A DNA stretch of 64,000 bases from Mizuhopecten yessoensis (lineage: Eukaryota), in assembly GCF_002113885.1 (NCBI RefSeq), contig NW_018407700.1, positions 1,520,545 to 1,584,544 on the forward strand. The letters run 5' to 3'. Both the position numbers and the translations under genes were made by a program. Below the pieces are notes generated by a model. It did not search any database, had not been told where the DNA came from, and saw nothing but the letters and a program-made list of their open reading frames with translations. This document shows positions 13,417 through 59,632 of this stretch, one piece after another. The first letter of the stretch is position 1; the number at the start of each line of letters is the position of its first letter.

Positions 13417-13619
13417 GGGAAATTACGCTTGAATTCTGCAAATAAAACGTGTCATTGAAATTCCTACTTTCACTTTCGTTTCAGCGTTATCTGGATAAAA
13501 TTAGATATGACAAACACGTTTTCCTAAACCGCGAGTAACAAAACGAAAGTACGTTCCGCGAAACCTAAGTAAGAAGAAGGGATAGTGTCCTTATTTGAGC
13601 CTACAGAGAGGAGGTAAGC
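13417..13619 (+). promoter_or_regulatory. ISRE/IRF, GAS and kB-like motifs plus putative non-coding first exon of USP paralogue 2
   Basis: GGGAAATTAC 13417-13426; ACTTTCACTTTCGTTTC 13466-13482; AAAACGAAAGT 13540-13550; TTCCGCGAA 13554-13562; donor GAG|GTAAGC at 13613/13614. Confidence 0.6.
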
Positions 13620-14741: not shown

Positions 14742-17700
14742 ATGGCGCCGAAAATACGCAAAGTCAGCAGAGGCACACCAGAAGGTAAGGACAAGTTGAG
14801 TACTTAAAAAATAATACTTTAAAGTTCTCTACAAAATGTTCCAACCACCAACAAGGAGAATGGATTGACTGACAAAGACTACACAGTGGTAAACATGTTA
14901 CATTGATGCCATATAATTTGTTGTTTATAACAATGGAATGGTTTTATTAATGCAGTAGAGCAGAATTTCTCTCATCCAATTAATTTTAATTTGGGGAAAT
15001 ATCGGTATAAATATAAGGAAAACTTAAGAGCAAATTAAAAGTAATTTTCTGTGAAATATGATTTTCTCGTCATCAGACCGGACGATGAAAGGGTATGGCA
15101 ACACTATAAATACCGGGAGGACATCAAACATGTTCGATGAGAAGCTTACAACTTCTGGTACGATATGATTTATGAATATTTATTCTTACTATCGATCTAT
15201 ATTTGTTTATATGTAATTTAATATTTTAACTCATATCCAATTCAAAGGAAATTAATCTTTTGATCTGTTTCCATGATATCCTATTGTCTATTAAATACAG
15301 TGTTACATATTCATAGAATTTAGAATCATTCAGAAATATACTATAAAGTTAAAATTATCATAAACTTATAAATATTAAAAAAAACTTTTGTCCATATAAA
15401 ACATTGTAGTAAATATATATTAAATCAGTATGTATGACAATTTACAGCAACTGATGAGGGTTTTATGTTTTTTCGATCAAATTATCATCCATATCAAGAC
15501 ATAATTATCTTTTCGCTAAAGACTACTGTATAATAAATTAAATCTTTTTCACGACTTTCTCTTATACAAATACAAAGCTAATATTTTTGTCACTAACTTT
15601 TGAATACAATATTTTTTTGTTTTAGATAGAGACTTAGTTATTGGCTACAGCTTTACGTTAAGAAAAGTTAACATATTTACCTCGCTTGCTTGTAAATTTT
15701 TACATTTCTTCGATTGTTTTGAAATCGTTTCACTGTCAATGTTATTTATATTTAATAATGCAATTTCCTTATAGAAACAAAGATTGGAGATACGCGTCTT
15801 TTCAGAACCAGACCGGAAACGGTAACAGAGTTTTTAATGTTATATATATTACAAAAGACTGGTAGCAATAACCGTCCGATCGTGTTCATTTGATATCGAA
15901 AACAATGTTTTTTATGACATATCAAAATTAATCAATTATAATTATTTGTTGCTGTTTCCATAACGGGATAATTCTTTTCCAACAAATCTCTTAACAAATT
16001 TTATTTTTCGAGGCTTGGCAATGTGATGGAGACTCAAATCAGGTATGCCTAAACGGAAAAAGGAAGAAGCAAGAAGACATCACAAAATTGTTTTGTGTGA
16101 AAGGTAAATTGCCAAGAAATTCTTGTTTAGATTATTTTATAAAGTGTTATATTTTCTTTGTCTGGTGGTTTTTGACAGCTACATTACGAAGTAAATTGTC
16201 ATTTAGCAGATATAAGGAAATGAGTTGAATGAGTGCATAACTATCATTATTTTTTGTTCACCTGGTTTACGTCGTAGCGCCTGTTCATCCGTTCGTCTGT
16301 CCGCCATATAAAATGCTACTCGTCCAGAGCGACTTTGATTAACTTTGGTAAAGGGGTTCCTCGAGGCAAACAGGGAAAATTTGGCCACGGGGGCGAGGAT
16401 GAGTACGGGAAACGGGATTTAATTTATTTGTCCTGGAAGACATTGGAGTAAAAGGGACATTATACGTGTAAACGAAGAATTTGGCCCTTTGAGCAGAGAA
16501 GATAGATCCAAAGGGGATATATTAAATACACTAACCATTTTTTTTATTAGAATTACAATTTTATTTGAATATAAAGTGTATCCCTACCCGCACTCACACC
16601 ACCTTCGGGACAGAGGATCAAGCGGGGAACTACATGCTAACTATTAAAATATGAAAACCATTCAGTATGAGCTTGATTTAACTAAATGTAGATTTGAGCA
16701 TGACGAGGAAAGGGGCCAAAAATCTAAATTTGGGGATTTTCTGTTTTCTGTAAAAATGGTAAAAGTTGAAATATAAATTAAAGTTAGTGTGATTCCTGGA
16801 TACGCTGGACCTCTACTGAGGAATAAAGGACGAACTGTTGTACTACTTCAATGGATCCAGACCTCACTATATAACAAGGAGACCAACACGTTCGTGCTAT
16901 CATGATTTGCCCTATCACGCAGCCACATCCCAGAGACTTATTTCCTGAATCCTAACTTGGAACGGGCGATATTCTCAGGATAAAACTACATGTATATTTT
17001 GCTAGGCATAAAGCCGTCAAGACAACCACGGTACTATGTTTAGCCTCGGGGTCAGTCCCCTTCCCCTTTAACTTACAATTGTAGTCTCTGTGTCATTACA
17101 TCCCTACAGTGCGTCGTTGTTACACAATTCCATGATAATATTATGTCCCTGAGTTTGACACAAATATATCTTACATCTCACATTGCTCACCCTCTATTTA
17201 TGCTTGTATATATTTAAAATACAGGAACTATGATTAAATAAGCTTAAAGAAAATAAATAATAAATCGGAGAGATACATCATCTTATACATTCCCAGGCTA
17301 TTTCTTGTACATATCTTTTCAGACTTTTTAGGCAGAGAATCCTTTATCAGTTGAAGTTTAGTCTACATGTATATACGTTTTCTGTTTTATTTCATGACTA
17401 TAGCTGTTAATAGGACGAAAATTACAAATAAAAACAAAACATATTTATTCTTTCGAAATGATGTTCTATACTATCAAATGGTTGGATTACCGTACATATA
17501 ATGTGTAAATTGACATAAGTTATTCTCGTCGTAAGCTTATGAAGATACCAATTTTTACTAGTAATTTTGTAGACATGAATTAGATTTATTTATAATATCC
17601 GTCTTTCTTTCATCGTCATTGTGGTAAAAACAAAAATCAGCTGATGATACACATTTGATCGTATTTTCTAAAGACGAGAGGTCTGACATGAGTAATGGCA

Positions 17701-20700
17701 TTAACCTGACTGAGGACATGCAATGCGGTTTTGAGAACAAAACACACACGGTAAGACTGACTAGTAAGCTTGCAAAAATGTATTTGTCTTTGTTTGGACA
17801 CATACCCGCTGATAATACGTATGTTTTTTAGACGGTGAAACTTTGGCGTATTAATAACGCTTTCAAGAAAATTTGTGAAATTTTCACATACAAATTTTAG
17901 AAGTGCCTTATTGACTTTGTTTGACTTTGACACTATTAAGTGTCAATGCATGCTTTCAAAACTGTGTACCTCATAAATAATGGAACGGACATTGTATAAG
18001 TACTTAGTACTTGTTTCCGAATCGTTGTTGATTATATATTGAAAATATAATGTATTGAATATTACCAGAAATAAATACAGTTTAAACTAAATAATGGTAG
18101 TAGAATTTAGCTAGGTCTGACTTACACTTATTCATTATAACATCTTCATTTTACAATGCAATATTTACATTTACTCTGCATCCTTCCATTGCAATACATT
18201 GAGAAGGCAAATGTTGTTGTGAGACTATAACATCATTTGCTATTGTAGCGTCGTAAATCTCTATGGTGAAGTCATCGATTTCATTGTTGTCAAGACTTAG
18301 TTTGCTTAACTTAATAAAGCGCCACATTACTCTATCAAAATGTAAAGATAGATAATGAATAATTTAGCAAATATTGTTATGTCCTATCACACACATTTCT
18401 ATTGCTGACAAATATAAATAAAGCCCTACCGGGCTTTAATACGTTTGTCATCAATAGCATTGTGTGTTATAGGACCATAACAACATTGCCAAAACACTTA
18501 TTCATATACATACTGTCCGCTGGAAACGTAAGGCATATGTAAATCGGTATACATTATTTCCTCGAATTACTTGATATATCACAGGAAGCAAGGCAGGACC
18601 CGGATCTTGGATATTTGTCATTGAGTGCTAGTCATAAAAAAAGACTTGTCAAGATGGAAGACATCCGTTGGACACTACCTCGTGTCTCGCCTGCAGTGCA
18701 ATTTCGCGATGTGTACGTACGATAAGTGTTCAGTTCCATACCAAACTATATTAATTATAAATACTCCTTCTTATTTTAAAGGAATTGCCTTCTTATTTTT
18801 TGGGTTTGTCACGTGTGAAAAACTTTCCTGGTGCTCCACTTCAAATCCCCTTAAAACTCAACAAAATATAAGGTTATTACTTGTATTTACATTAATAAAC
18901 ACATATCAGATAGGTCAATGTATGCATATTACAGACGTATTTTTGGATGATCTGTTCGATATAGTAAAACCAGGCAAATTCATTCAAGCAAAATACGATT
19001 AAACGATTCTCTAACGTATGTTCGATCACTTTATTGTTGTCAAATATTCTTAAAATAATCAAATATGCATTATTTATCAGAAATCAAAAATAAGATTAAG
19101 CGTATAATAATTGTAAATCTTACCTATTAAACATACTAAAATAAACCAATGATAGTGTCCGTGGACAAAAGGAGGCAAAATTGTAAAGATTCAATATATG
19201 CACGTTATACTCTGAAAGGTCTTACAAATAATGTCTTCTAAACATAATTATTGACTTCCGATTTACAAGTGTATTATTTTGAGCAAAAACAATGGACAAA
19301 AAGTTACAATCTACGGTTTAAGACCTCTCCCGCTCACCCCTTAATGACCCCCTCCCCCTCCAACCACCCCTTAGGTTGTCTTTATAGTCAGGCGTGACGT
19401 ACTATGAGTTTGTAAATTTGTCATTTCATTTTAAATATAATAACATTCCAGATGGGTCCAGTTGAAGATATTTCAAAATGAAAAACAAGTTGGAAAGGTT
19501 GTAACAGCAAAGCAGAGAACAGATGTAGTAAATTGTATAAAGTTTAGAGGTCAACTCAAGGTAATAATGTATATTATATTTCCAAGTTCACTACAAGGGG
19601 TCAAATTTCCAGTAGTCACATTGCTTATTCGGCCTATGATCTTTAAATGACTTAATTTCTTGGCAAGGAACTTGTTCCATAAAAAGAGAAATGTGACGCA
19701 GATCACTCTGAAGAAAGGGATAACATGTTTAAGAATTACAAAGCTTGTCGGGCCAATAAAGATACTTGTCTGGATTCATGACTATGCCCTGAAACTAATG
19801 TTAGTGTGGAGGTGAAAAATTGAAGATTCAAATATTAAAATCATATTATTAAAATGGTTGTATCATGGCAAGACAAAGTGTCGTTGATAGTAGGAGACAT
19901 GTGTTAATATTTAGCCTTCCAGTATTCCTGTTAATGTTTAACCTTTGTTTTTACAGACAAAGATTGAAAGAGATTGTCCAAAAACCACTGTATCGCTGTG
20001 TGTCTGGACTACCAAAACATCCAAGAAATTTTTTAGAAAGCCTGATAAGTCACTCGGTCGAGTAGACATAAAACTAGACTCATTTGACGAAAAGCTGCAA
20101 ACTAAAAATATCTACCTACATCCATGTGAGGTAATCATTCTTATTTGTATGCTTAATTCCCTTACAGATGTAACATTTGATGGTATATGCTTTATGTAGT
20201 ATGCATAATTGACTGATAAAATTTACTGTATAGTAAAATGAGGTGGAACTGCCATGGCGTCAACTCACATGAACAATACTGGAAAACGAAGTCGACAGGA
20301 AAAGACATTAACAGAAACTGAGAGGATAATAATTTTTATTCTGACAGTTTTATATAATTAATATGCGTTCCAGTTCGATAGATATCCTTTAGCTAAATGG
20401 CTTAAGAATATGTTATTTTATGTTAAAATCTTGCTCAAAAATCACAAAATGAACGTTCTGTAGTTGAATGTCGTTATTATCAAGTATACTCAGCTACAGA
20501 GAAAAAAAATCTTAACGGACTTTAGTACATTTCATTTTAATTTAAACATCCCGTTGTATTACACGTAACTAAAAAGTAGAGTGTTATGTTATTGCGCTTT
20601 GACTTGCCACAAAAAATATTACTAACGGTTACATTTACGTTAATCAAATTTCCACATCAATAGTGTGGTGAGTGAAATGAGTTTCTGCAGGCTAAAGCTA

Positions 20701-23700
20701 ATTGCACACTTGTGTATATTTATTCGGGCACTCAACTTTTGTGTATTTATGTACTGTTTAGAACGTCTATGATTCTAGATAAAGTTAACCAAAACTCTTT
20801 CCTTTTTCCATTCTTGAAATATGACCAAACATCGGCAGGTGCTCATCTTTAAGCAAACACTATCGTTGAAAATGTCACGTATTATCGATTGTTTCATAAA
20901 TCGGTTGCAAACGCGAAATATGCGAAAGTCATTATACAATTTTCACACGAAACCAGCTTAGTGAATACAATGTTATCTTGTTAATGGAAAATGAGTAAAA
21001 GCATAGTGTCTATACACATGTAACAATAGAGCGGCAGGAGAAGACATATGCCGAAAATAAATAGATAAAAAATATCCACATACGTGTGGAATAGGTGTTG
21101 CTTGTTCCCCACATGTGGTGTCCTGTATCATGGAAAGTGTAATGATCGCCAACGAAACATTAGACAGATTAACCTCAAAATTGGATATTGTATCATAATA
21201 TTGTTCGTACTCAATCATAGCTTTAATCCTCCTCTTCTGCATAAGGAAGGAATAAATAGGAAAAATTATGAAGAACATATGTAATGTTGAGTAATCGTTA
21301 GAGATACAGAGAAAGAACGCATATATACCTTTACAAACTTGAGTAAGTCGATACAAAAAAAAGTTAAACATAGTATTTTTTACTGTGTCATTATATATGA
21401 ATCGGAAGGGAAAATAAAACATATTTTCTGTCGTGATATATCTAGTTCTAAAGATGATAAACGAATTTCAAGGAACCTTTGAAATATTTGTATTTTATTC
21501 GAGGAAAACGCATCCTCATGGTATCGGAATGTGGGGTTATCGTATAATTTCAGCTGGCTATTTTGAATCAGATCGGCTAAACGTGGTATGCCGTTAGTCT
21601 CCAATGGGGTCCACAACTTTTTTCCAGGCCTTTTTCTCTATCCTTTTTCTTGGTGCTTGCATAACGAGTTTAAGTAGTTTGTATTTATCTTAATTTAAAC
21701 TACAAGAATGAATCTAAGGTGAAGTTTTAAGTGCATTTACTTTGTTTCCTGTAAACAGGGAGGTGAATGGAAGCAGAGTCCTTCAAGTCCAAAACCAGCA
21801 ACCGTAGTCACAGTTAAGTCAGTGAGTAAGCGGCAAACAACGTCAGGGAAAAGATTGTCGATGGTTTTGAAATTACCTTTCTTTATTACGTCTTTTAATG
21901 TTTGAGGTTGTAATTTTGGGAAGCGACACAAATCTTTTTATTAGAAAAATAACAAAACATTTGTAGCATTTTTCCCTTAATGCTGAATTTTTACTTCAAT
22001 GAAAATGTATGATGCAGATAATATCATATGCGCAGTCGTCAAAGAAATCGTATGCTTGCTTATGTTTCCATTTTGAACAAATAGCTTGAATTACATAATG
22101 ACTTTGTTTATATTCCAGTGTTTCCCCTTTGACAGCCAATCTGAAGTAAATGACACTTCGTTGTCTACTCGAGTTAAATCGCCTAATGTCCCAAAGACTA
22201 CAACATCAAGGGAACAAAACGTTATCAGCTCTGCCGTGCCTAACTTGGTTTGAATTATTTCACTACCGGTGTTTAACGATAACCGTATAATAAATCAATT
22301 TAATTTATGTAATCTTCTAGCAGAAACATAATATTGTTTTAATGTGATGGATTTATCTACCTAAGTAATATCTTGGCAAAATTGTGGACCGCAACCAAGC
22401 ATTAAGACTTGCATTTTAACTATTTAGTAATTGTTTATTTGTTTGTTTGTGAGAAAGGAAAGGTGGAAAGGGTAATGAACTACTATTGCTGAAAGTTAAC
22501 GTTACCAAATCGTTAACTCTGTCCATGTTGATGAATTTTCTGTTGGATTTTCTTCTAGATCGACATTGGTAAAGCAGGCAATTCTTCAAAAAGGTCGACA
22601 AATAACCACAGCACAACGCATTGTTCCACTGGTGAGTTTTTTCATACGGCTTTATCATCCGGAAAGCCTTATGTTAGGAAAAGCGTCGACAACATAAATA
22701 CCTGCAATACAAAAGGAAAAGCACCAGAAGTTAAGACCAATTATCGAAGCACCAAAGAAGGATTCACCGAAAACAGAACTCGACATCTGAATATTAAAAA
22801 TATTTCTGAAAAAAGCAAGTATGGCATATGTAAAGATATATATGCTGAGGACAAGCAGCAAAAGCAAGATAAACCTCCAAAATATACTGCGAGAGAAAAT
22901 GGAAGCACAGCAACAGCCGCTGAAGATGAACCACATCGTCATTTAATAAAAGAAACAGTTACAACTGTAAGTTAACTTAAACATATGTATATGATTATTT
23001 TTAATACTCTTCTCGAATGTATGATTTTATGTATACGCTTGCGTTGGAATTGCATGAAAGGATATGAATCAGTACTTGGTTTATACTTGACGTGATTGGA
23101 ACAACACTGTCATTGTAATGGTATCAATGTATCAATAAGGTTCATCGGTTGATATCAGTTAGGATTTGCTCTCTTTATCGAACTAATACACGCGGAGTGT
23201 GATTTTCCAATAAAGAGATTTTTGTCTACTATTCAGCAACATTCCTCCCTAATAATTCGTAATGTCGTAGCATTTCATATTTTTTACAAAAGAGATTGAC
23301 ATGGCATCTTATCCACGAACTATATTCATGAAGGAATAAGCCTCATCGTCTTTGTTCATACTTAATTTAGTTTGCTATGTATCATTTTGATAACTGCAGT
23401 TCAACATATTCCACTGACATATCGAAATACCAATATTTAATACCGGCTTCCAAATTTTACATATCATGGGAGAAATTTACGGTGACCGTATTTTTTTTGG
23501 CAAGCTCACTGTTTTATCTTTCTGTAAACAATGTGTGGTTCCTCTGACGAGGGAGTATATTCTTAATTTTTATTTATTTACGTGTTTTAACCGTCCTATC
23601 AATATATATGTCATATGCAAAAATACCAACATCTCTAATACAAAATTGATATAACAGGATATTTAAAAAAAAACCATCATCTACCATTATAATATTTTAA

Positions 23701-26700
23701 AGATTCGACTGCACTGCATATATATGTGATTGCATGTTGTGCATTTCACAGACAAAAGAGACGCAGAGCGGAAAGATTCATGAGAACGACCACAGAAACA
23801 GTCGAATACATGATATAAACAAAGAAGGTCCTTCTCTTCAACACCAGCAAATGGAACAAAAACTGATAAAGCAGTCGATTAATGAAGCAATACTTTATAA
23901 TCATCCACAAACAGCTAGAATCTCCAGAACATCGGAGGTTGGTAACAAAACAGTAAGATCAACCTCTATTGTGTAATAGACAAAATTCCAAGAAAAAAAG
24001 TAAGTTAGACTGCGATTACAAGACAAAATATAGAAAAATAAAAGAGGATAAAGTGACACTATTTGATCATAAGTACAATGCTGATCTAATGTTATTACGA
24101 TTAATATTTAAGGTTGGAAACGAAACTTTTAACCAAAATAAGTATGTATATACCCTCTATACGTTGTGTTTGCAGTCGGAAGAAGCCGATTCAAGAAAAA
24201 TGAAGTGGCAAACAAGTATAAATTCGACACAAAATACAGGTACAACATTTTTATTTTTTTATTTTGTTATTGAGATGGTACACACATATTTATCCTGTGA
24301 CGGCATATTGTCAACGTTAAGGGTCAAAAAGAAATAACTTGTTCAAACTTCTTGAAAATTAATGGTAAAATATGACACCTTTGTTAGCATCCGGCCTTTG
24401 TTTTTTTCTTCAATTATTTCCAATAAGGTCCTGACAATGTCTTCCCATTGATATACAGACAGTATGTATTTCCTAATGACGAATAATTGTTAATTTACAG
24501 CTTTAAATTATTATTTTTTGTTTTGTTTATTCAGCGAAAGAGTCCGGCGACCATGAGAAAAAGAGTGGTAACCTCTGTACTAACACCGATATTGAGCTCC
24601 ACGAGATCAAGGTATAAAAATGAACTTCAGATAAAGCGTCATTTCATAGCACTCAGTTTGTTTACAAAAGCACATTGACATGTCTTAATTCAGACGTCAT
24701 TAAATTTAAATTTGCTTTTGTTTATTTGAGTAGCTAAAATCAAAAATTTATTCAATTTATATCTCTCAATGCAGATATTTTATTGTTGTCTAAAACATCA
24801 CAGGGATTGGAATTTGTGGTGACCTACCACCTTCCAGCAAGCCAGTTGTAGCTTAATGAATAAATGATATGTTGAAAAAAGAGGTATAGAGGTTTCAAAT
24901 CTATAATTATGCAGTACCGCCTATTTTCAGAGAATTCGTCTGTTTCCTTATTAAGAAAAAATCACCATCCTATCCATATTAATCAATGCTTGCATCTTCC
25001 AACAAGTAAAAGTGTTTTTTTTAATATTGATTGCTACTTCAATATCAACATTTATACAACGATGCACACCAACCATGGATCTTTTGTCGAGATAAGAAAA
25101 ACATTGTCTGCCATTATACATACGACTGTACTGTTAATACAATATATGCCATAAAATGTTGTCCGTGTCACAGACACAAGAAACTCAGAGCGGAAACAAT
25201 GATCGGAATGAACAAAGAACGGAACCAAAAGCATTCAGAGAGCAAACGATTGATGTAGAAAAACTTTGCATGCAACCACAAACAACGAGCAACTCGAAAG
25301 CATCGAAGGTTTGTGATTAAGCTTCAAATCATCCGGCTATTTTTTTCCTCCGTAATTGAAAAAAATCGCCTAGAAAATATGAAAAAAGAATACAAGGCAA
25401 ATTAATTATAAAGAAAAGATACTATAGTGACACCACTTGATCAGAACGTAGTTATATTTCTGATGCGTCAATATTACAATAGCATATTACGTCAAGGGTT
25501 ATAAATTTAAAAAAAGTAAAATCTTACACGATCACCATTTATTTCTTAATTGATAAAGATTCCAAGAGAAACGAAATACAGAACCTCATGCAAATCAAAA
25601 CATAGAATGCTGATTTTTAGCCATATTATAATATTATAGTTCATATTACTACATTCCTATGCTTTGTGTTCGAAATTAAAGTTCATACTACAATAGATAT
25701 GACTTCTGATTTATGTTGTGTTTGCAGTTAGAAGAGGTCGAATCCGAGAAAAGTAACTTACAAACAAGCACATACTCTACAAAAAACACAGGTAAAACAA
25801 TTTCAAAAAATTCGTTTTGTTTTCGAAATGGTAAACACCCTTTTCTCTTGTGGTTACAGTTCGACACAATCATAGTATGTTTACAATTTAGACCGATATT
25901 GGGTAAGCAAATTACTTTTGTAAAAGTCTTGAACTTTAGGGTCACTGTCGACACCTTAGTCACCATCCGGTTTTGAATAGTGTGTCTGTACCAGTACAAA
26001 TCTAAGTACTAGAAATGTCTTCTCGTTGATCATGGGACAGTTTCTATATAGTAATGAGCAAATTGTTTCAAATTTGCAGATTAGTGTATGTTTAATTTTT
26101 CAGAGCACGAATCCAGCTTCCAAAACAAGAACAGTGGTAACACAGCTGGCAATAGAGAAAAAGACCTCACCATGGGCAAGGTAAGATGAAGTCTTATCTC
26201 GTAGCATTTAGTTTATTCATAAAAGACATGTACAAACAATAACGGGAATGGCTGAATACGCAATGTTAAGTAAGAAGATCACTTTCTGAACCAAACACAA
26301 TGAAAAAGCAATCGATCAATGTAAAATTACTTTACAATCATCCGAAAACAGATAGCAGAGCAGCAGCCAAGGATAGAAACAATACAGTTAAATCCGACCC
26401 ATTCACATATATTTTGTAATCGATAAAAACATCCCAGAAAAGATAGATACCGGTTGCAAAGCAAATTCCTTACAAAGAAAAGAAGGCTATAGTGACACCA
26501 CTTGATAAAAACATAAAATGCTGACTAGGTTGGAAATGAAACTTAAACCAAACGTTATGCTGCTTTTTGCAGTCAACAGAAGCCGAATCCCGGAACATTA
26601 ACATGCAGACAAGTAGGTATTCGTCACGAAATACAGGTACAACAATTTGTTTTCCACCAATTTCATGTTTGATTACATTTTGTCAAAGTTATAGTATTTT

Positions 26701-29700
26701 TTCAATTCAGAACAATTTGGTTCAAATGAGAATACCTTTGCCAAGGTCTTGAAACTTAGGGTCACTGATAATTTTTTAATGGGACAATTTAGTGAAGTAG
26801 TTTTTTTTGATTACCTGAAAATCAAGGCGATACCGAAAATATGTATTTCCTAACGAAAGATTACGTAGTTGATATAGACATGACATGAAGCCAACGTCCA
26901 GTGTGGTCAGTTTCATCTTTTGGGAAAGCCGGTGATCAAAATAGCTACGAAGCAAACATGTACATCACTACGCTCTCGACCGACAACAGAGTGGCATTTA
27001 TACGAGTCTGAGTTCACACATAACTCATTCTTGAATTTGCACATTTGGATTTGAATAAGGACACACAGGTTCAATTAGAGCATGCACGCATTGAGAGGGT
27101 GCCACAGGGAGAATTTCAAACCGCAGAAATTACGATATCAAAAGGTTTAAACGTAAAATAGATCACTTACTTATAACGATGTTTTAGATGCTGTTGGGAG
27201 ATGCTTTTGATTCAAAATAGATGTATATACTTCCATTTAGAGAGGCTAGGCGAATAAAGCGAGAAGTTACCTTCTCTCCTCGACTGCAAAGACATTTTTG
27301 TTAGCTAGAAATTCACCGACAGCTGCCGCTAAAACGTACGGTTGTACAGTTAAGGATTTCTCTATTGCGGATTAAAAACGCCAAGAAAACATTGTCTCTT
27401 GTCAATTTCTCGCCATTAATTGTTCATAGTTAGTATCAAACTATATCATCATGAAGAGTTTTGTGACAAAGTTATGAATAAAACTTACTTCAATAAATTG
27501 TCCCTTTAATGTGTTTTTAATTTTCAGATAAAAAGCCTGGTAACACAGCTGGTAGTGAAAATGAGCTCAGCATGACCAAGGTAAATAAATGAGCGTAAAA
27601 TGAAATGTGATTTCGTAGCATTTAGTATGGTCGATAAATGCTTCGAAATCACACCATGGATAGACCATAATTTCATTTTAAGAATTTAGAAATTAATTTT
27701 ACGTTAAGGACTCCCGAACCACTGTCAAAAACTGTGACAAGGAATTTGAAACAGGTTGTTTTCCAGTATGACTATAACATTGATGAACCATGTCCGAAAA
27801 AAACATGATACCACGCGGGACTTATACATTAAATATGATCAACAACAGTGTTCTTAGTACAAAACAAATCAGGAGATCGAAATCCTATATTCAGAATGTT
27901 ATACTATCGCTCCAACTCTACTACAGTTAAATCCAAGCGGAAGTTAAGGGTAGGTTATCTTCCGTTAATGGTTAAGGATCCTTAAAGATACCTGACCCAC
28001 TGAACTGTTGTTTTTTACGAAAACTCAATGAAGCAATACCTCCTAATATTATGGAATATGTCTGTTAATATTCTATGAATAATGTACCATTCTGTCTTTA
28101 TGTAAACAACGCGCAGACGTACCAAAGAGCTTGTGTAGATATAAGACTAAAGGGCAAGTAATCTGCAGTATTCGAAGTGATTCAGTAACTGAAATGCCAA
28201 ATACCAAACTGTTTCTGCTATTGTACGTGAATTTACTATCGTTACCATATGTGCATATGTATCATATACCTTAATACAAACATCGGGAATAATACCTATT
28301 AAACGAGATATCCGCCATTATATTTTTACTGCGACTACATTGATAATACATTATAAGCCTTAACTTGTTGTTCATGTCACAGACAAAAGAGACGCAGGGC
28401 GGAAAGATTGATGGACAAGGCCACGGAAACAAACGAAAACATCACGATGAACATAATGAAGGAGTTCCTTTTCAACACCAGCATACGGGACCAAAAGCAG
28501 TGAGAGAACAAACTATTAATTAAGAAAAATCTTTTCGATCAAACACAAAATTCTATCAACTCCAGAGCTTCGAAGACTTATAACAAACAGTAAATTCGCC
28601 ACTTGATCAAAAACATACAATGCTGACGTAACCATATGCTGCTGTGCTTCTAACGGTTCATGTTTGAAATTCAACAAACCTTAACAAAAATGGTAATGAT
28701 TAATCCCTGTTATTATTCTGTTTGCAGTCAGAAGTAGCCGAATCCTTGAACATATACTCGCCCAAAAGAACATCTTTGAGTCAAAACAAAGGTATATCTT
28801 TTTTTTCGTTTTGTTATTGAGATGCTAATCAACATTGTAAATTGTGAGGACATTTCAACCCAATCATAGTACGTTTCGAATTTAGACCGATCTTGGGTAA
28901 AAATACCAGTATAAAATCTTTAACTTTAGGGTCAATATAGCTTATCACCATCAGAGTTTTGTATTCATCGGATATCGAAGTACTGAATATATCTTCTGAT
29001 TGAAAACGGGAGAGTGTCTATGTAATGATAAGCGAATCAGTCAAATTAACATATTAATGTATGTTTAATTAATAGAGGAACGATCTGGCGACAAAAGCAG
29101 AATTCACAGAACGGTTAGTGTGCTATTTTGTTATGAATGAATAAATGTAAGATGTTCTAAGACTTTTGAAACTTATCGTTTTATAATAAGCTTATCAAAA
29201 TTACTTCGTGCATGTTTCAGGAGATGTTTCATCAGAACTATATGGTGTTTTTTTCTGTGAAATTTATAAATTGTCTTCAAATAAAAAATACAGTTCTTAT
29301 ATAAATTACGATAAAAGTTATAGATACTGATATAAGTTCATTTATTATATTGCAGGGTATTGCAAACCTCGGAAACACTTGTTATGCGAACAGTGTCCTC
29401 CAGGTAATGTTTATGCATTAAAAACGCAATAAAATGTTCAGGAAGCTTTCATAGCTAAGCACTGACATAACTATCGCTAATATAGTTTCAACCTAACACC
29501 CATTAAAATTATTCAAACTCAGTTAGAACTATGATGATGGTATTGCAGGTTAGATGCCTAAAAAACTCAAATATGTACCCATTTATTGAGCCTAAGGGTA
29601 GCGTCCGAATAGGGAAAGTTGGCTAAAAGATGTCAAATCCTCTTTGTATCCGGAATAAAGTATAAGTTAATGCATTTCATTCATAGTTAAATAACATATT

Positions 29701-32700
29701 TTGAAGCTTTGAACATGTTTTGCCTAATTTGGTAATTATAATGATCATTTGATGGCAATTTGATGGTATGAAAATAATGATGGAAACAAAAGTTTATGGC
29801 GAACTGGTCATTCATAGGGGCCTACCAAATCTGTGTAGAGAAAATGACTATGAGAAAAGCTGTTATTTTTCGTTATTTCAATAAATCCATTTGAGCAGTG
29901 TTTAATTTGGCATTTGGTCCCTTCTTCTATTTTAAAATACAAATTTATTTTTTGACAATAAATTTGATCTGTTCTGTAAAATATCATTGAAATGACTCAT
30001 GTGTGCGTATGCCTTGTACATATGTAAGAGCACTTTTTCCACTTTCATTTCTCATCAGTAAGGTTGAATCAAAAGGAAGTCTTTACGATTAATTGATTTC
30101 AACGAATCGCTCTATACTGACATTAAGAAATGTGCAGAAGAAGATATTCGCCAATTTTGTCATTTTTTCCCCCCGTTGTTTTTACTGAGAAATAACAATA
30201 ATAGTGTTTTTATTTATTTGGTATTTCGTCAGTTTCCTTAAAATAAGACGACAACTTAAGTGATACAAAACAATAAAGAACAATTTGCTTCAAGGTCTTA
30301 TGAAATAAGGATAGTGATAAACCTGTTTAAATCATGTACCATTTCCCTCTTTATCTACAGGTCCTCGGAAAAACGCCTCAGCTAAGTAAATGTTTAGGAG
30401 GAAACGTAAGTTGAGAAAAAGAATATCATCTGAAAAGAGTTATAAGAGTTTATTGTACAGAAGGTTTCATATTATTCTGAGAACACTTAGAATAAAACAT
30501 GAAAATTACATTTGTTTCAGTAACCACTTTAATACTGAACTCTATGACAAACGTAACGACATATAATGCTTCTCTCTCATCCTTCGTAATGTAATTTCAG
30601 CCTCTTCTACCTGGTAATCTGTCGCAGTTTAAATGCTACTCTAGAGCCTGTTCTAAGACCATTGAAGAAATATCAACTACGAGATTTCACTGTGTTCTAT
30701 CATTAACGATTTGTTCACATTGTCTTAGAAAATTGTAACCTCCGTGATTTACTCGATTTGACAGACAGCTGTCACATGTACAGGTAAAGGCTACATTTCT
30801 GGAGCACCAACCGTCCTGTCCGGATCTTATCAAGAAATGTTTTCTTGTCATGCGTTAATTTTCTGTATTAGTTCAGTTGAAATTACATTTTTGTGTTGTA
30901 TTATCTCATGTGGTTATCATTACAGCCCACAAGGAGTGCATCCCTTTTAAAAGCAATTGTGGACGAACTGAATACAGACGACGGTCAAGTCAACAGTCAA
31001 AACGTCCGTTGTTTGCTCCGTTATGTTTTCAATAGGTATTGTTGTGTTCTTTATTGTCAATATGATGCACATATAATCCGTAAATAATACAATATCAATG
31101 ATGTGCTTACAAAACAATTCAGAACGTTTCAGGTTTGAAATTGAATTTATAGGAAAATTTGCCTTTTTCAGAGGATATATTGTAGACGTGAATGAGCAAT
31201 TGTTTTAAGTAAATGATAAAAATAATGAGTCAAAGTTCATTTTATAAATTAGTTTACTTCATTTTAGGGACGACTCATTCGTTTTGGGACACCAGAATGA
31301 CAGTCATGCATTTCTTCTTTCCCTACTTGACTGTGTAAACAACGATTCAGGTAATCAAACTTAAACATTTGTACTTAAAAAGTGAGAATATGAAACTGCA
31401 AACCAATGTTTCAATAACAAATCTTATGTTAGATTTAATTATTTAGAGTAATTTACATTCGATTGCAAATGTAATTTTATTTATGGCCAAATGTATTATA
31501 TTTTAAAGATATCCTCAGCTGAAATATGCCTTAAAGTCAAAATATTTGTAGTTACTTCATAAAGGTTTGAAAGACCACCACTTATTTTCAGCCATTGCTT
31601 CCAACGGGTACCAACATGCAGTAAATAAAAACATCTGGAATGTAATAAACCCGCCGAATCAAACAGACATAGTTCAGTTACATTCGGAATCAAATTATAC
31701 CAGCTTAGAAATAATTTCAGGCGGAATTTGAATCAGCGGAAATGCCCCTATAGTACAATGCTTTACTTTGACTTTATGTTGAGGTTCTCAATAAAAAATA
31801 TAAAAAAATATGTACCGGAGGTTCCAATTGTCTTTTCGTATTGATATTATGTTCCGACTTTGTGTTTTAACATTCTTAGATATATGTATTTCTCCACTTA
31901 AATTATTTAGGGAAACAACACATGAAGTATAAGATATAAAGCCAATGGTTGAACCCAAAAACAATCAGTAGTATTCAATGAAATTTTATCTACCAGTGTT
32001 AAAATAGGCATAATGAAGTGGAACTTAAATTACGGTGGCACAAAAGCCGAAGGTCGATGACACAAAGGAAGAGAGTTTAAAATTGTTGTGTACCTTGTAA
32101 TGTTTTAGTATAAATCTTTTCTGATTTTCTCCAATTAAGGAAATTCATATGGGTGTAGTATGGTAATAATCCAGGTTGGTGTGTAGATTGTGTTGGTATT
32201 ACTCTTAAGTTAACCATTCGCCGAATATTGTTATAAATGACAATAGCTATGTAAATATTTCGTTTTGCATTATTGTAAGTTGTAGATACATGCCGACTGT
32301 TTAGTGGCAAGATGACGAGTCGTTTCACGTACAACACGTGCAAACACGTGAGTAAGCAATTTTTCAGAAAAAAGTTCAGCCAAAAGTATGTTAAGCAGAA
32401 GGAAAAAAAGTAAAGCTATCCATTAAATTTGACACTGGAGGAAATAAATTTCATTTAAATTTCTAAAAGGCGTGTTGGTTTTCTAAATCTATATACCGTA
32501 AAAGAAATTAAAAAAAAAAATCTATTATTGTATTCATGTCCTAGCTTTAATTTACACAGGTGGAGTATTCAGGCGAACAACTCTTTTACAGTCTACTGAT
32601 GCCAATTAATAACACACATGTAAGACATTTCGATTACACATTTGCTACCAGGACAAACTTTTCAAACTGAACATACTAGCAGCTAAATGTTTGTGTCGTT

Positions 32701-35700
32701 ATAATTATATAAAGGTGCGACGGTACTTACTAATCGCAATGTGACATGTGTATCAATTAAATTTTCCAGAATGTACATTATTAGATAAATGTTAAAATCG
32801 TCATGCGATAATAATTTGAAAGAAACAACAGTTTAGATTGTATATTTTTAGTAATGAACTAATTTGCCAGTTACCATTTCAAAACTCAATATTCCATCAA
32901 CGTGTCTTTTTTAGACGTTGGATGATTGCATTAATGCATACTGCGAGGAGGAACATTTCCCTGACAACCTCCTTTGTTGTCGAGAGTGCCATGAAACTAA
33001 AGCTGGTATATATTTCCTTTTTTGTCGCTCTTATATTTTGATTCCCAGTTTTATACTTTCCTGTAAATGATATATCAGGAAAAAAATTGTGTAAATTCTT
33101 CAACATATTTAAAATATTTATAGTACATTTGGATGCTCATTTAAATGATTTCACGTTACAAAACATCCCAAATACATTTTTTTTTTTTTTTTTCATTAAT
33201 TAATTTTGGTAAAAACGTATTTTATAGCAAATTCGATATTGTGTGCATTCAATCATGTTTTAATTTCAAAGCAAAGTAATAATGTTTTGTTGATTATCCA
33301 TTTACTCTTGGTGTAGACACAGTTACATCCAAGAAGTTTGTTTTCACAAAACTTCCCGAAGTATTAGTCCTACAAATGGGCCGATTTGAAGAGGTAAGTA
33401 GGCATTTAGATCACGAACTCAATAATGTAGAATGAAAGATATACACCTTCTAAAGAAATTTTATGAATTTAAACGGCTATAAGAAGCATCGAGATCATAT
33501 TTGAAAAAAAATATAATGATATTACTTTCTTTTATTTATATATTAAAACCTACCTACCTTAAACATTAATCCGTGACTTGATTTTCGCAAAAAAGGACAA
33601 TGAATTTGAAAAATAATTCTAAACAAACGTTTTTGTTTTTAGTACACTGATGAGTCAGTTCTTAAATAGACAAAATTGCCATATGATGCCGTAAAATGTT
33701 GAATTTGTTTGACTTTCTACTTAAAATACGATTTTTCAAAGGTGTTTTCTTTCCTCATACCTCGAATGACTTATTTTCTTCTGAATTATTCTTGCATTAT
33801 AAAAGAACCATGTTAGTAAAATTCAAGTTCAAAAATGATTTCACATTGCGGTGGTTAACCTGTTGTCTGTTGGTGTATAAAGAGCTTAAGTGATGCATAA
33901 TAAACTGTGGGTAGATGGATATGGTTCCTCAATACATTTCTGAAACGAACATGAGCGAATTCCCAAAGGTATTGTTTTGACAATTTTAACTTCTAATTTA
34001 GCTTTTCTTGTCATAGATTTCGACCCATTAACATATTTATGTGTTATTAGCTGTATCTATATGATTTAAACCAAAGTACTCCAATCATAGTATACTCGTT
34101 TTATTTATAATTAATTACAAAAGCAAAAATAACAGTAAATGTATCATGTTGTATAAATAAAAGTAGTACCTGTGGTGGCGTAGGCATATGTTCCCATGAT
34201 TTTGACAAATCGCAGCACCTTTAGGGTTAGTTACACATTTGTAGTACCATATTTATGACATGGCCGTAAGACATAGTAAAATCGGTCAGTTATGTGATAT
34301 AGACATATAAAATCACATTACGCAGAACTACAACACGACAGAAAATAAATAAGCACACAAAGACTGATATTAATCTGTCATAATCAATATTTCGGCGATG
34401 ATGATAGCTTTGCATGTTTGTATATTTCAAGCACATGGAATCCCATGGGACGATTATACGGAAAAAAACCACAAGGATCAGTTTTGAAGAAAAGATTCAT
34501 TTTGACCTAGAGAAAATAGAGGAATCTGGGGTTCGTAAAATGTTACCTTGTAGTTATTATTTAAAACATACCTGAAGGTGTTTTGTTCATTTGTTCATTT
34601 TAGAGAATCACAATAAAAATAAGCCTCGGGAAAGACTAGCAAAATATATTACCTGTAACTGAGTGAGATCAGGTTATCTCAGTCGAGGGTTAAGATTCTT
34701 ACGCCTCGGTTGGGATGTTACAGAATCTTAGCCCGAGACTGAGAGAACCCGATCTTGCTCAATTACAGGTAATTGATTTTTTTTCTCGCACCTTTAGTTC
34801 GAAAGAACTATCAAATTTTGCTAAAAACTAAAAGTATCCTTCGTTGGGCATCAAATGATAATGACCTCTTCACTACTTAAGCTACATTTCAACGCTTCCG
34901 GGTAAAAATGTTGTCTGTCCTTACATGGATTACAACGTATTTCACAGTGTAGATTATATTTTATCTACAACATCAAATATATAACAACATCAAAACTACA
35001 TATGTAACAACAAAACAGAACATTTATAATGCAAATTGTCAATTTCAAGCAGTTAACGCGCGGATGAATACTTTGACATCGACGATCGAGATAGAAAAAT
35101 CTAGCATGGGGTATGACGTGGGATATCTCTGTCTGAGGTGCGAGTAAGGTTTATCTTGTCACGGGTCAATACCTGTCTTTCACGGGCAAATATGGGAGAA
35201 CACCTGGTCTTACTCTCCCTGTAGTTTCGCAAAGGTATCCATGTTAATCTTAGCTTAATTAGTATGAACCTTGCTGGGGTGTTTTAGAGTTTGAGCTCGA
35301 ATTATAGTTTTGTTAACACTTCGGTATTCTCTTGTTGTCCTCCTAGTATAGTTAAATTAGCGATACAAGAAACATCAGCCTCTTGTTGTCCTCCTAGTGT
35401 AGATAAATTAGCTATACAAGAAACATCAGTCTCTTGTTGTCCTCCTAGTATATATAAATTAGCGATACAAGAAACATCAGCCTCTTGTTGTCCTCCTAGT
35501 ATATATAAATTAGCGATACAAGAAACATCAGCCTCTTGTTGTCCTCCTAGTGTAGATAAATTAGCGATACAAGAAACATCAGCTTCTTGTTGTCCTCCTA
35601 GTATAGATAAATTAGCTATACAAGAAATATCAGCCTCTTGTTGTCTTCCTAGTATAGATAAATTAGCGATACAAGAAACATCAGCCTCTTTTTGTCCTCC

Positions 35701-36585
35701 TAGTATATATAAATTAGCGATACAAGAAACATCAGCCTCTTGTTGTCCTCCTAGTGTAGATAAATTAGCGATACAAGAAATATCAGCCTCTTGTTGTCTT
35801 CCTAGTATATATAAATTAGCGATACAAGAAACATCAGCCTCTTGTTGTCCTCCAAGTATAGATAAATTAGCGATACAAGAAACATCAGCCTCTTGTTGTC
35901 CTCCAAGTATAGATAAATTAGCGATACAAGAAATATCAGCCTCTTGTTGTCTTCCTAGTATATATAAATTAGCGATACAAGAAACATCAGTCTCTTTTTG
36001 TCCTCCTAGTATAGATAAATTAGCTATACAAGAAATATCAGCCTCTTGTTGTCTTCCTAGTATATATAAATTAGCGATACAAGAAACATCAGCTTCTTGT
36101 TGTCCTCCTAGTATAGATAAATTAGCGATACAAGAAACATCAGCCCTTTGTTTTCTGTTTGAAGGAGTTTATATGTTCGATTGCACTATCTTACACTTTC
36201 TGGGTGATGATTTAGCAACATACTATTAAGAGATATATATCATATTCATTTGATGTAATATGTCTGTCACTTACACTTCAGTAATACTTACGTCTTAACG
36301 ATATTTGAATCATTTAACACTAATCACCTTTATTTCTCACTGTTTCGTTTTCAGAAAAATACAAAGTCCACTTCAAACAAGACAAGATACTCCTATGAGT
36401 TGTATGGTGTTGTCAACCATTACGGAAGTATGGCAGGTGGTCATTACACAGCAACTGTCAAAATGGAACGAACTGACCGCTGGTACTTCTGTAGTGACAC
36501 TTGCGTTAGATCGGGCTCTAGCCCAGCTAAAAAAATGGATGGGGGAGCATACCTGCTCTTCTATCATTTACATCATGTACTGTAG
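14742..36585 (+). CDS. USP-family deubiquitinase paralogue 2 (~950-1020 aa): degenerate C2 domain, repetitive low-complexity linker, C19 domain
   Basis: N-terminal exons: 14742-14784, 15077-15157, 15775-15821, 16013-16042. C2-like exons: 18585-18712, 19452-19560, 19957-20130. Linker exons: 21759-21821(?), 22119-22247(?), 22559-22966, 23752-23937, 24176-24239, 24535-24611, 25174-25308, 25728-25791, 26104-26180, 26573-26636, 27528-27580, 28383-28499, 28728-28791, 29076-29113. Catalytic exons: 29356-29403 (GIANLGNTCYANSVLQ), 30361-30405, 30926-31035, 31268-31350 (QNDSHAFL), 32286-32347, 32560-32619, 32915-33005, 33317-33393 (LPEVLVLQMGRF), 34432-34530, 36355-36585 (YELYGVVNHYGSMAGGHY...WYFCSD...AYLLFY). 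The catalytic part is secure; the join to the N-terminal exons is inferred from phase continuity. Confidence 0.82.
16250..16760 (+). mobile_element. Degenerate non-autonomous Helentron/HINE(Pearl)-like element
   Basis: Begins tttttgttcacctg, followed by a tccgttcgtctgtccg microsatellite-like tract and GGGG-rich internal motifs. It resembles the element at 60780-61380. Boundaries are approximate. Confidence 0.35.
18367..18489. mobile_element. Fold-back (long imperfect palindrome) MITE-like element
   Basis: gcaaatattgttatgtcctatcacacaca...taaagccc pairs with gggctttaa...tgtgtgttataggaccataacaacattgc around a ~3-nt centre. Confidence 0.7.
18585..20130 (+). other. Three exons encoding a degenerate C2 domain within USP paralogue 2
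   Basis: Spliced peptide LGYLSLSASHKKRLVKMEDIRWTLP...DVWVQLKIFQNEKQVGKVVTAKQRTDVVNCIKFRGQLKTKIERDCPKTTVSLCVWTTKTSKKFFRKPDKSLGRVDIKLDSF...IYLHP tracks the C2 strand pattern (GxLxLSL; DPYVKL; KxKT; LxVxVW; DxxLGxVxIxL). Most Ca-binding aspartates are absent. Confidence 0.65.
21380..21700 (-). mobile_element. Possible decayed LINE ORF2 C-terminal fragment
   Basis: Peptide ...QLKLYDNPTFRYHEDAF...RFLEIRLSSLELDI loosely resembles the KLxxY...RLSSxxLxI motif at the end of LINE ORF2. Weak match. Confidence 0.3.
23700..29120 (+). repeat. Four-fold tandem duplication of an exon triplet (A, B, C) with its introns
   Basis: A exons begin TKETQ/TQETQ (23752, 25174, remnant ~26290-26370, 28383). B exons are all 64 nt, phase 0-1 (24176, 25728, 26573, 28728). 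C exons are phase 1-0 (24535, 26104, 27528, 29076). Shared intron motifs include gtgacaccacttgat and tttagggtca. Confidence 0.85.
26780..27505. mobile_element. Non-autonomous DNA transposon with TIRs and TTAA target duplication (Kolobok-like)
   Basis: TTAA-tGGGACAATTTAgTGAAGTA ... TACTTCAaTAAATTGTCCCt-TTAA. The equivalent intron of the other triplet units lacks it. Confidence 0.7.
34648..34773. repeat. Long inverted repeat (~52-bp arms), MITE-like hairpin
   Basis: attacctgtaactgagtgagatcaggttatctcagtcgagggttaagattct pairs with agaatcttagcccgagactgagagaacccgatcttgctcaattacaggtaat. Confidence 0.8.
35195..35340 (+). mobile_element. 3' fragment of a dispersed retroelement-like repeat (copy 1 of 3)
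   Basis: Shares gaacacctggtctta and tttgttaacacttcggtattctcttgttgt with the copies at ~40020-40350 and ~54240-54432. Confidence 0.55.
35329..36150. repeat. 51-bp minisatellite, ~16 copies, in the last intron of USP paralogue 2
   Basis: Unit tcttgttgtcctcctagtatagataaattagcgatacaagaaacatcagcc. Confidence 0.97.
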
Positions 36586-41037: not shown

Positions 41038-41559
41038 ATATTTTTCCTGATGAGCTTTATTCATATTTCGTTTAATCAAATTTAATACTTGCTTCATATC
41101 ACAGGTAAACTAGTCTGGACTATATAGAGACGTGCTTAGGATTATAATTACTTCAACCACTTTGCAAACAACAAATGCTAAATTGTAGACTTCACGTCAC
41201 AAAGATGTATACCACAACTTTGCCCTTGTTCAAAGGAACCAAAAGTATGTCATATTATTTTTTGTCTTCAAATATCACTGCATATTTATTAATTAATTAA
41301 TAGTAGTGTTTAGTTTTACCATCAACTCAAATTAAATCGTGCAAATTTGGTTTTTTATATTGATACGTTTTTTCTGTCCATATCTATTGTGTAAGCTTCG
41401 CCATGTCCTAATCGTTGACAGCCTGCGATAGAAGTCGAAAATTGTCATCATATCCATTGCAATACCTGTGCTGAAAAGATGGTAGTAAATCGAAAGCTTC
41501 ACAGAGGAAACCGAATACCGCATTACAGATGTTTGGTATGTGGCCGGTTTGGTAGGAAA

Positions 41560-59100: not shown

Positions 59101-59632
59101 CAGATAAGGAGAATCTCTACCTCAAGTCTGAAAGGACAATCTTAACAGATACGGGGGATCTTTACAGGTAAAGAAGATCTAAAACGGTAAAAAAAAAACA
59201 GAACATGTCAGATTATTAAGAAAGAATTTACAGCTTTAGTACACACCTATTAACCTAAATTAGGTAATAACACGACATTTACTGAGATAATAATACATCA
59301 TTTATTCTATTTATTTTAAGAGTAACATTGTATACATACATGTCATAATATCCTTTTACCTTTCAACTTTACCAACATAATGGGAGACAAGCATTTTATC
59401 AACTGTTTCTCAATTCTTTCCATTGCAGGCGTTTGAGCTACTTGATGAGGGCGAGAAGGGCTTTGTGACATTCGAGGATTTAAGACAGGCTGTTGACGAC
59501 AACAAACTAACGTTTTCTAACCAGATGCTGAAGGAAATGATGCAAGATGCAGACAAGTCTGGAGATGGAAAACTGACATTACAGGAATACACACAAATTA
59601 TGTTACATACCAGCCGATTCAAGTTCGCCTGA
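53126..59632 (+). CDS. Centrin/caltractin-like four-EF-hand protein with a long acidic and coiled-coil N-terminal extension (~433 aa)
   Basis: Exons 53126-54036, 54493-54575, 55734-55837 and 59429-59632 are phase-consistent. EF loops: DVKGKGYINDKD, LAGDTGRVSFVN (degenerate), DEGEKGFVTFED, DKSGDGKLTLQE (canonical). Probable 5'UTR exon 52817-52875; AATAAA at ~59808. Confidence 0.9.
54240..54432 (+). mobile_element. 3' fragment of a dispersed retroelement-like repeat (copy 3 of 3), intronic
   Basis: atggcgggtgtcgtcactgaagcagaagacgcttacctttccggaacac...tttgttgaaacttcggtattctcttgttgt. Confidence 0.65.
55833..58470. repeat. 46-bp minisatellite, ~57 copies with higher-order blocks, starting at the exon/intron junction of the centrin-like gene
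   Basis: Unit aacagGTAAGGagaattaacataaagGTAAGGtcaactacgtatag. The first unit includes the real donor at 55837/55838. Confidence 0.97.

What the first reader, a model, noticed from the sequence alone, without database searches (positions are those of the whole stretch)
18585..36585. C2 domain fused to a USP catalytic domain
Seen: three exons splice in frame into a ~135-aa peptide with the C2 strand pattern, few Ca-ligand aspartates and a basic/aromatic loop (TKTSKKFFRKPDK). A phase-compatible exon chain links it to the Cys-box exon at 29356. Established: C2 domains target NEDD4-family E3 ligases to membranes, and I do not know C2 as a standard USP accessory domain. Inference: this is a Ca-independent, lipid-binding, membrane-targeted DUB created by exon shuffling.
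Basis: partly seen in the sequence, partly recalled or inferred. Interest (0 to 1): 0.8.

Follow-up and report, generated by a model that had tools for sequence, protein, structure and literature searches.

The report
Scallop deubiquitinase with hidden C2 domain
A Yesso scallop gene already annotated as "USP8-like" joins a probable calcium-independent, strongly basic C2 domain, which no annotation shows, to an intact ubiquitin-removing enzyme through a long floppy linker; the pairing is unusual, and its membrane role is untested.

Summary
The three exons (18585-18712, 19452-19560, 19957-20130) splice in frame with GT..AG introns. RNA contigs from two studies confirm these joints.

They are exons 6-8 of a 32-exon coding sequence (14742-36585). 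This is the public Mizuhopecten yessoensis model XP_021362835.1 / LOC110456413, "USP8-like", 1069 aa. All six annotated isoforms carry both the C2-like part (residues 114-250) and the USP domain (768-1063, Pfam UCH 1.2e-38, catalytic Cys/His/Asp present).

C2 evidence:
- A repeatable Pfam C2 hit below threshold (E about 0.06).
- A low-confidence AlphaFold model whose 20 best matches among 48,161 solved chains are all C2 domains (Z up to 11.3, 124 residues).
- Language-model neighbours that are mostly C2-type families.

The predicted calcium loops hold 0 and 1 acidic residues, and the domain is net +13, so a calcium-independent C2 is plausible.

Not shown:
- Lipid binding or membrane targeting.
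- Exon shuffling. No relative of the C2 part was found in 1.84 billion proteins.
- RNA continuity across exons 18-23, which rests on the annotation.

Verdict: a new variant of a known kind, seen in a single species, of moderate interest.

The parts
14742..17750 (+). Coding exons 1-5 (14742-14784, 15077-15157, 15775-15821, 16013-16103, 17674-17750), residues 1-113. No Pfam family; probably disordered N-terminal region.
   Evidence: P0001 mapped to the window. The exon 5>6 joint is seen as the loose end of RNA contigs. No Pfam hit.
18585..18712 (+). C2 exon 1 of 3 (gene exon 6), residues 114-155. Predicted strands 1-2 and the loop equivalent to calcium-binding loop 1.
19452..19560 (+). C2 exon 2 of 3 (gene exon 7), residues 156-192. 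Predicted strands 3-5.
19957..20130 (+). C2 exon 3 of 3 (gene exon 8), residues 193-250. Predicted strands 6-8.
   Evidence: phmmer of this exon against 1.84 billion proteins finds only P0001.
20011..20049 (+). Basic/aromatic loop TKTSKKFFRKPDK (residues 211-223), between predicted strands 6 and 7 (the position of calcium-binding loop 3).
   Evidence: the loop 213-222 has 4 K/R, 2 F and 1 D.
21759..29113 (+). Linker exons 9-22, residues 251-768, rich in S/T/K/E/N with no Pfam family. Exons 12-22 are about four tandem copies of a three-exon cassette (about 117-201, 64, and 38-77 nt).
   Evidence: RNA joints are seen up to exon 13, and loose ends run into exon 14 and beyond.
29356..29403 (+). 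USP Cys-box exon (gene exon 23) with the catalytic cysteine.
30361..34530 (+). USP exons 24-31, including the QND.H box (31268-31350) and the zinc-ribbon cysteines (32286-33005).
36355..36585 (+). Last exon (32): His box, catalytic His and Asp, stop codon TAG at 36583-36585.
   Evidence: (UCH E 1.4e-14).

Best explanation
One Yesso scallop gene (LOC110456413, coding sequence 14742-36585, + strand) encodes a protein of about 1070 aa with four parts. Residues 1-113 have no recognised domain. Residues about 118-250 form a synaptotagmin-type (type I) C2 beta-sandwich. Residues 251-767 form a low-complexity linker of about 517 aa, built partly from a duplicated exon cassette. The C-terminus is a USP domain with its catalytic residues intact. 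The C2 lacks most of the acidic calcium ligands, is strongly basic (net +13) and carries a KKFFRK top loop. It most likely docks onto acidic membranes or another anionic partner without calcium. This would tether the deubiquitinase on a long leash near ubiquitinated membrane-associated substrates. Shown: the exon structure, splicing of exons 5-14, the single open reading frame, the USP family assignment and the catalytic residues. Predicted: the C2 fold. Inferred: calcium independence, lipid binding, and any immune role.
For: Gene and frame. P0001 is 100% identical to the exon translations; six isoforms all hold both parts; there are 32 exons, each with a GT donor and, from exon 2 on, an AG acceptor. 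RNA: joints in two studies; searches place the loose ends at exons 14 and 5. USP: UCH 133.6 bits, E 1.2e-38; Cys, His, Asp and the QxD.H box are invariant against USP8 proteins. C2: Pfam C2 is the only family hit, at 13.6-14.1 bits and E 0.058-0.082, for five of eight boundary choices. The AlphaFold model of 110-256 has seven strands. Foldseek's top match is synaptotagmin-1 C2A, E 7.5e-4, TM 0.59/0.67. The top 50 VIA-align matches are all C2, Z 10.1-12.1, about 3 A over 120-126 residues. In the exhaustive search of 48,161 chains, ranks 1-20 are all C2 (Z 11.3-8.7), and the first non-C2 match at rank 21 covers only 98 residues. The ESM Atlas top shape match is a tandem-C2 protein, TM 0.67. A second, poorer model again picks the PI3K-gamma and Nedd4-2 C2 domains for residues 130-238, Z 5-5.8. 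Language-model neighbours are C2, NT-C2, Aida_C2, C2-C2_1 and RPGR1_C. Loops.
Against: The C2 model has low confidence (pLDDT 50, pTM 0.47, no alignment). The longer model is worse (pLDDT 40), with matches below Z 8. The Pfam score is under the 22-bit cut-off, and three boundary choices gave no hit. phmmer against PDB sequences found nothing. No relative of the C2 part exists in the libraries searched, so conservation and selection cannot be tested. Exons 18-23 were not covered by reads here. Two deep raw RNA runs held 0 and 1 reads, so expression is low or restricted. No experiment bears on lipid binding, and a net-basic C2 could equally bind proteins or nucleic acid.
Confidence: 0.6

Rival explanations
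1. The domain has a C2 fold but does not target membranes. It binds a protein partner or folds back on the catalytic domain to regulate it, as C2 domains do in some HECT ligases.
For: The fold evidence is the same as above. C2 domains without calcium ligands often act in protein-protein contacts (established knowledge). The long flexible linker would allow an intramolecular contact.
Against: The net charge of +13 and the exposed KKFFRK loop at the membrane-facing position are more typical of lipid-binding C2 domains. There is no evidence for any partner.
Confidence: 0.22
2. Residues 114-250 are not an autonomous C2 domain. They are fast-evolving, lineage-specific coding sequence that is strand-prone or disordered, and single-sequence AlphaFold happens to pack it into a common beta-sandwich.
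For: pLDDT is 50 and 40. Pfam is below threshold. No homologue exists anywhere. Generic GH2 beta-sandwiches also match at Z about 8-8.7.
Against: Three different kinds of method (profile, shape, language-model features) all point to the C2 superfamily and to nothing else. The top 20 of 48,161 chains are all C2 and cover the whole domain.
Confidence: 0.13
3. The C2 exons and the USP exons belong to separate transcripts, and the 1069-aa model is an annotation merger.
For: Reads laid here stop at about exon 17-18. A fragment search across the linker/Cys-box boundary found nothing.
Against: A single open frame runs through 32 exons, all with GT donors and AG acceptors from exon 2 on. All six Gnomon isoforms and the depositors' model OWF45890.1 join the two parts. 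RNA contigs link exon 5 through at least exon 14 without a break. The unverified exons 18-22 are copies of the verified cassette.
Confidence: 0.05

Closest known systems
Synaptotagmin-type (type I) C2 domains: synaptotagmin-1 C2A, KIBRA C2, rabphilin-3A C2A, PI3K-C2alpha C2
   Same: The predicted eight-strand sandwich superposes over 120-126 residues at about 3 A, Z 10-12. The top loops occupy the same positions.
   Different: Sequence identity is only 12-18%, and Pfam scores below threshold. The loop-1 equivalent has no acidic residue and the loop-3 equivalent has one, against five calcium ligands in synaptotagmin C2A (established knowledge). It resembles calcium-independent, phosphoinositide-binding C2 domains such as KIBRA or PI3K-C2alpha more than a calcium sensor.
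NEDD4-family HECT E3 ligases (N-terminal C2 + catalytic domain)
   Same: An N-terminal C2 sits on a ubiquitin-system enzyme, joined by a flexible region. Nedd4-2 and Itch C2 domains appear among the structural matches (Z about 8).
   Different: The enzyme here removes ubiquitin (USP) rather than attaching it. There are no WW domains. The sequences are unrelated. This is an analogy of architecture only.
USP8/UBPY, the name NCBI gives the model
   Same: The catalytic domain aligns over its whole length at 26-32% identity with the catalytic residues conserved.
   Different: The MIT/USP8-dimerisation (PF08969) and rhodanese (PF00581) domains carried by true USP8 proteins are absent from P0001. The nearest relative is a scallop paralogue at only 31%, followed by fish proteins at 28%. 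It is not a USP8 orthologue.
Scallop paralogues of the same fast-evolving USP family (P0007 = LOC110456411; the copies at about 8.1-11.7 kb and 41.4-47.9 kb of the window)
   Same: They share a divergent USP core (25-48% identity on exons), and the two in-window copies sit in tandem with it on the + strand.
   Different: They have no counterpart of the C2 exons. P0007 and the third in-window copy carry RING-like zinc fingers upstream instead (below threshold).

Membership tests
C2 domain superfamily (Pfam PF00168 / C2 clan) | Eight-stranded antiparallel beta-sandwich of about 110-130 residues | tested here: met
   The AlphaFold model (pLDDT 50) has seven clear strands plus a weak eighth. The best 20 of 48,161 chains are all C2, Z 11.3-8.7. 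The top 50 Foldseek-ranked chains are all C2. This rests on a low-confidence model.
C2 domain superfamily (Pfam PF00168 / C2 clan) | Profile match at or above Pfam's gathering score (22 bits) | tested here: not met
   13.6-14.1 bits, E 0.058-0.082. C2 was the only family reported, and it appeared for five of eight boundary choices.
Calcium-dependent C2 subclass | Cluster of about five Asp ligands in loops 1 and 3 | tested here: not met
   The predicted loop 143-152 has 0 D/E and loop 213-222 has 1 D. Loop positions come from the model, not from a residue-level alignment.
Lipid-binding C2 | Binding to acidic phospholipids or phosphoinositides | not testable with these tools
   Only indirect evidence: net charge +13 and the KKFFRK loop.
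USP / peptidase C19 (Pfam PF00443 UCH) | Profile match above threshold over the whole domain | tested here: met
   133.6 bits, E 1.2e-38, residues 768-1063 against profile positions 1-254 of 254.
USP / peptidase C19 (Pfam PF00443 UCH) | Catalytic Cys, His and Asp/Asn present | tested here: met
   The invariant columns in alignment A2 include the Cys-box C, the His-box H and the following D. One of the four zinc-ribbon cysteines is missing.
USP / peptidase C19 (Pfam PF00443 UCH) | Deubiquitinating activity | not testable with these tools
   No assay was possible.
USP8 orthologue | N-terminal MIT/USP8-dimerisation and rhodanese domains | tested here: not met
   Pfam finds only UCH in P0001. USP8 proteins carry PF08969 and/or PF00581.

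The most novel reading that the evidence does not exclude
This is a deubiquitinase that a calcium-independent C2 domain recruits directly to membrane lipids. On this reading the C2 was added recently to one member of a fast-evolving, tandemly duplicated scallop USP cluster, possibly immune-inducible, whose other members carry RING-like modules instead. That would be a natural mirror image of the C2-HECT ligases.
Probability: 0.3. Interest if true: 0.6.

Novelty: new variant of a known kind. Interest (0 to 1): 0.42.

Why it matters
USP enzymes reach their substrates through accessory domains. As far as I recall, the well-studied ones use DUSP, UBL, zinc-finger UBP, MATH, MIT/rhodanese, EF-hand or transmembrane segments, but not C2. 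Four literature searches found no described C2-USP protein. If the C2 really binds lipid, this gene shows a way of placing a deubiquitinase at membranes that mirrors the C2-HECT ligases. It would also show how quickly N-terminal targeting modules are swapped in a lineage-specific DUB cluster. It is also a practical reminder that threshold-based annotation missed the domain: the public record lists only UCH. The limits are that it is known from one species, has no orthologue to test for selection, and has no functional data.

Tried and rejected
- Pfam on the three exons singly gave nothing, because they are too short.
- tblastn of the C2 exons against the window found no second copy near the other two USP paralogues.
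- My crude splice-site exon finder recovered only a few linker exons. Mapping the public protein replaced it.
- I first read the repeats at 23.7-28.9 kb as interspersed elements. They are in fact duplicated coding exon cassettes.
- I considered the in-frame ATG at residue 137 (good Kozak context) as the true start. RNA contigs splice exon 5 onto exon 6, so the upstream start stays possible. This is left open.
- Word-index searches with region 114-250 and with fragment 640-840 found only the protein itself or nothing.
- phmmer of 110-256 against PDB sequences gave no hit.
- The longer model of residues 1-275 was too poor to add much.
- The raw RNA runs X21 and X24 held almost no reads.
- Searches of the scan's own notes by words and by sequence gave nothing relevant.
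- I made no spliced peptide of my own and sent none to any search or fold tool. The joined step was left out, and the public protein P0001, identical to the exon translations, was used by reference instead.
Full report
**What is in the sequence.** The window is AT-rich animal DNA (about 33% G+C).
- 18585-18712: AG acceptor, donor GT|GTACGT, ending two bases into a codon.
- 19452-19560: supplies the third base of that codon.
- 19957-20130.

Together they give 137 in-frame residues. The loop TKTSKKFFRKPDK lies at 20011-20049. The Cys-box exon is 29356-29403. It and the His-box exon hit Pfam UCH on their own (E 3.2e-06 and 1.4e-14).

**Which gene it is.** An exhaustive phmmer search of the third exon against 1.84 billion proteins returned exactly one protein, P0001, at 100% identity.
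- P0001 is XP_021362835.1 / OWF45890.1, "ubiquitin carboxyl-terminal hydrolase 8-like isoform X2" of Mizuhopecten yessoensis, gene LOC110456413. It has five further isoforms.
- All six isoforms contain both the C2-like part and the USP domain. They differ only by small alternative splice choices in the linker and at one USP junction.
- Checking P0001 junction by junction against the window places it on 32 exons from 14742 to the TAG at 36583-36585. Every exon has a GT donor and, from exon 2 on, an AG acceptor.
The module starts and ends between codons (phase 0-0).
- I did not build or submit a joined peptide of my own. The public protein was used by reference, and the joined step is left out.

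**Transcript evidence.** Contigs of two RNA data sets from different studies (X1: 958 and 962 nt; X2: 1481 nt) show these GT..AG joints:
- 18712>19452, 19560>19957, 20130>21759, 21821>22119 and about 22247>22559.
- 22966>23752, or the exon-skipping 22966>24176, which matches isoform X6.
- 23937>24176, which uses the alternative donor of isoform X4.

The letters that run off the stretch match exon 5 (17720-17749, one mismatch) and the start of exon 14 (24535, exact). From the contig lengths I infer that they reach about exon 1 upstream and exon 17-18 downstream. Their link to the Cys-box exon rests on the open frame, the annotation, and the fact that they are copies of verified cassette exons. 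A search for protein fragments spanning that boundary found none. Two deep raw RNA runs held 0 and 1 reads, so expression is low or restricted.

**Is it a C2 domain?**
- Single exons are too short for Pfam. On P0001 pieces, PF00168 C2 is the only family reported, at 13.6-14.1 bits and E 0.058-0.082. It covers profile positions 22-100 of 104 and appears for five of eight boundary choices. This is below the 22-bit cut-off.
- A single-sequence AlphaFold model of residues 110-256 is all-beta with seven clear strands but low confidence (pLDDT 50, pTM 0.47).
- Foldseek ranks synaptotagmin-1 C2A first (E 7.5e-4, TM 0.59/0.67), followed by the PI3K-delta C2 and RIM1 C2B.
- VIA-align gives Z 10.1-12.1 at about 3 A over 120-126 residues, and all 50 top entries are C2 domains.
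- In an exhaustive comparison with 48,161 representative chains, ranks 1-20 are all C2 (Z 11.3-8.7). The first other fold, a GH2 sandwich, covers only 98 residues.
- The ESM Atlas shape search puts a tandem-C2 protein first (TM 0.67).
- A second, poorer model of residues 1-275 again matches the PI3K-gamma and Nedd4-2 C2 domains over residues 130-238, but only at Z 5-5.8.
- Language-model neighbours are C2, NT-C2, Aida_C2, C2-C2_1 and RPGR1_C clusters at 0.88-0.91.
- Against this, phmmer versus PDB sequences finds nothing, and no homologue exists to build an alignment.

I put the C2 fold at about 0.8.

**Calcium and lipid.** In the model, the loop between strands 2 and 3 (143-152) has no acidic residue. 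The loop between strands 6 and 7 (213-222) has one Asp, four Lys/Arg and two Phe. The domain has 29 K/R against 16 D/E. By established knowledge of synaptotagmin-type C2 domains, which use five Asp in these loops, calcium binding is unlikely and binding to acidic lipid is plausible. This is inference, not a test.

**The enzyme.** Pfam UCH covers residues 768-1063 at E 1.2e-38. Aligned with USP8 proteins from barnacle, Hydra and spider and with a scallop paralogue, the Cys-box cysteine, the His-box histidine, the following aspartate and the QxD.H box are all conserved. One zinc-ribbon cysteine is missing. The domain is very divergent: the best relative is the scallop paralogue P0007 at 31%, then fish proteins at 28% and a Pecten maximus protein at 28% over half the domain. 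None of the 120 listed relatives carries PF00168. The MIT and rhodanese domains of true USP8 are absent, so "USP8-like" is only a best-hit name.

**Surroundings.**
- The window holds three tandem copies of this USP type on the + strand, with His boxes near 11.5, 36.5 and 47.8 kb. Neither of the other two has C2-like exons.
- The third copy has an exon with below-threshold RING hits (41419-41589). The out-of-window paralogue P0007 also has below-threshold RING hits in its N-terminal 850 residues (sequence).
- So the family varies its N-terminal modules. This fits module gain but does not show where the C2 came from.
- The 0-0 phase of the three-exon module is compatible with exon shuffling. With no detectable relative, that claim stays untested.

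**Linker.** Residues 251-767 are rich in S/T/K/E/N and match no Pfam family. Exons 12-22 are about four tandem copies of a three-exon cassette. I first took these for interspersed repeats.

**Verdict.** The fusion is real at the level of annotation and of partial RNA evidence. The C2 fold is probable. The membrane-targeting mechanism and the exon-shuffling origin are hypotheses. Four literature searches found no described C2-USP protein, but InterPro architectures could not be queried. I rate it a new variant of a known kind, with moderate interest.

The scan's other notes on this window helped with context, and I partly checked them: the tandem USP trio, the promoter of paralogue 2, and the species name.

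Noticed in passing
window 23752-29113: The linker exons 12-22 form about four tandem copies of a three-exon cassette (A 117-201 nt, B 64 nt, C 38-77 nt; the DNA copies are 63-83% alike). The disordered linker therefore grew by internal segmental duplication. Exon 12 is skipped in isoform X6 and in run X2.
   Followed up: partly
window 35176-36291: A 51-bp minisatellite (repeat finder lists 17 in-register 300-nt copies at 51-bp spacing) lies inside the last intron. It is open in one frame for 312 aa but is not part of the coding model.
   Followed up: no
window 41419-41589; P0007 residues 200-400: The third in-window USP paralogue has an exon with below-threshold RING hits. The out-of-window paralogue LOC110456411 also has below-threshold RING hits, and several cysteine-rich segments by eye, upstream of its USP domain. 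A RING-plus-USP protein would be worth its own look.
   Followed up: partly
window 13468-13618: ISRE-like motifs (TTTCACTTTCGTTTC, AAAACGAAAGT) are followed by a good splice donor at about 13614, 1.1 kb upstream of the ATG exon. This may be a non-coding first exon and promoter.
   Followed up: no
window 23937 / 23952, 21817 / 21821, 32280-32286: Small alternative donor and acceptor choices (5-aa, 3-aa and 2-aa differences) separate the isoforms. The 23937 donor is seen in run X1.
   Followed up: partly
window 53072-54037 and 59381-59629: The downstream gene has a 322-aa acidic open exon and an EF-hand pair (Pfam EF-hand_7, E 1.8e-11). It is unrelated to the finding.
   Followed up: no
window 17743, 22167, 22647, 22714, 23818: RNA contigs and the reference differ by single letters in coding exons. 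These are presumably polymorphisms between individuals.
   Followed up: no
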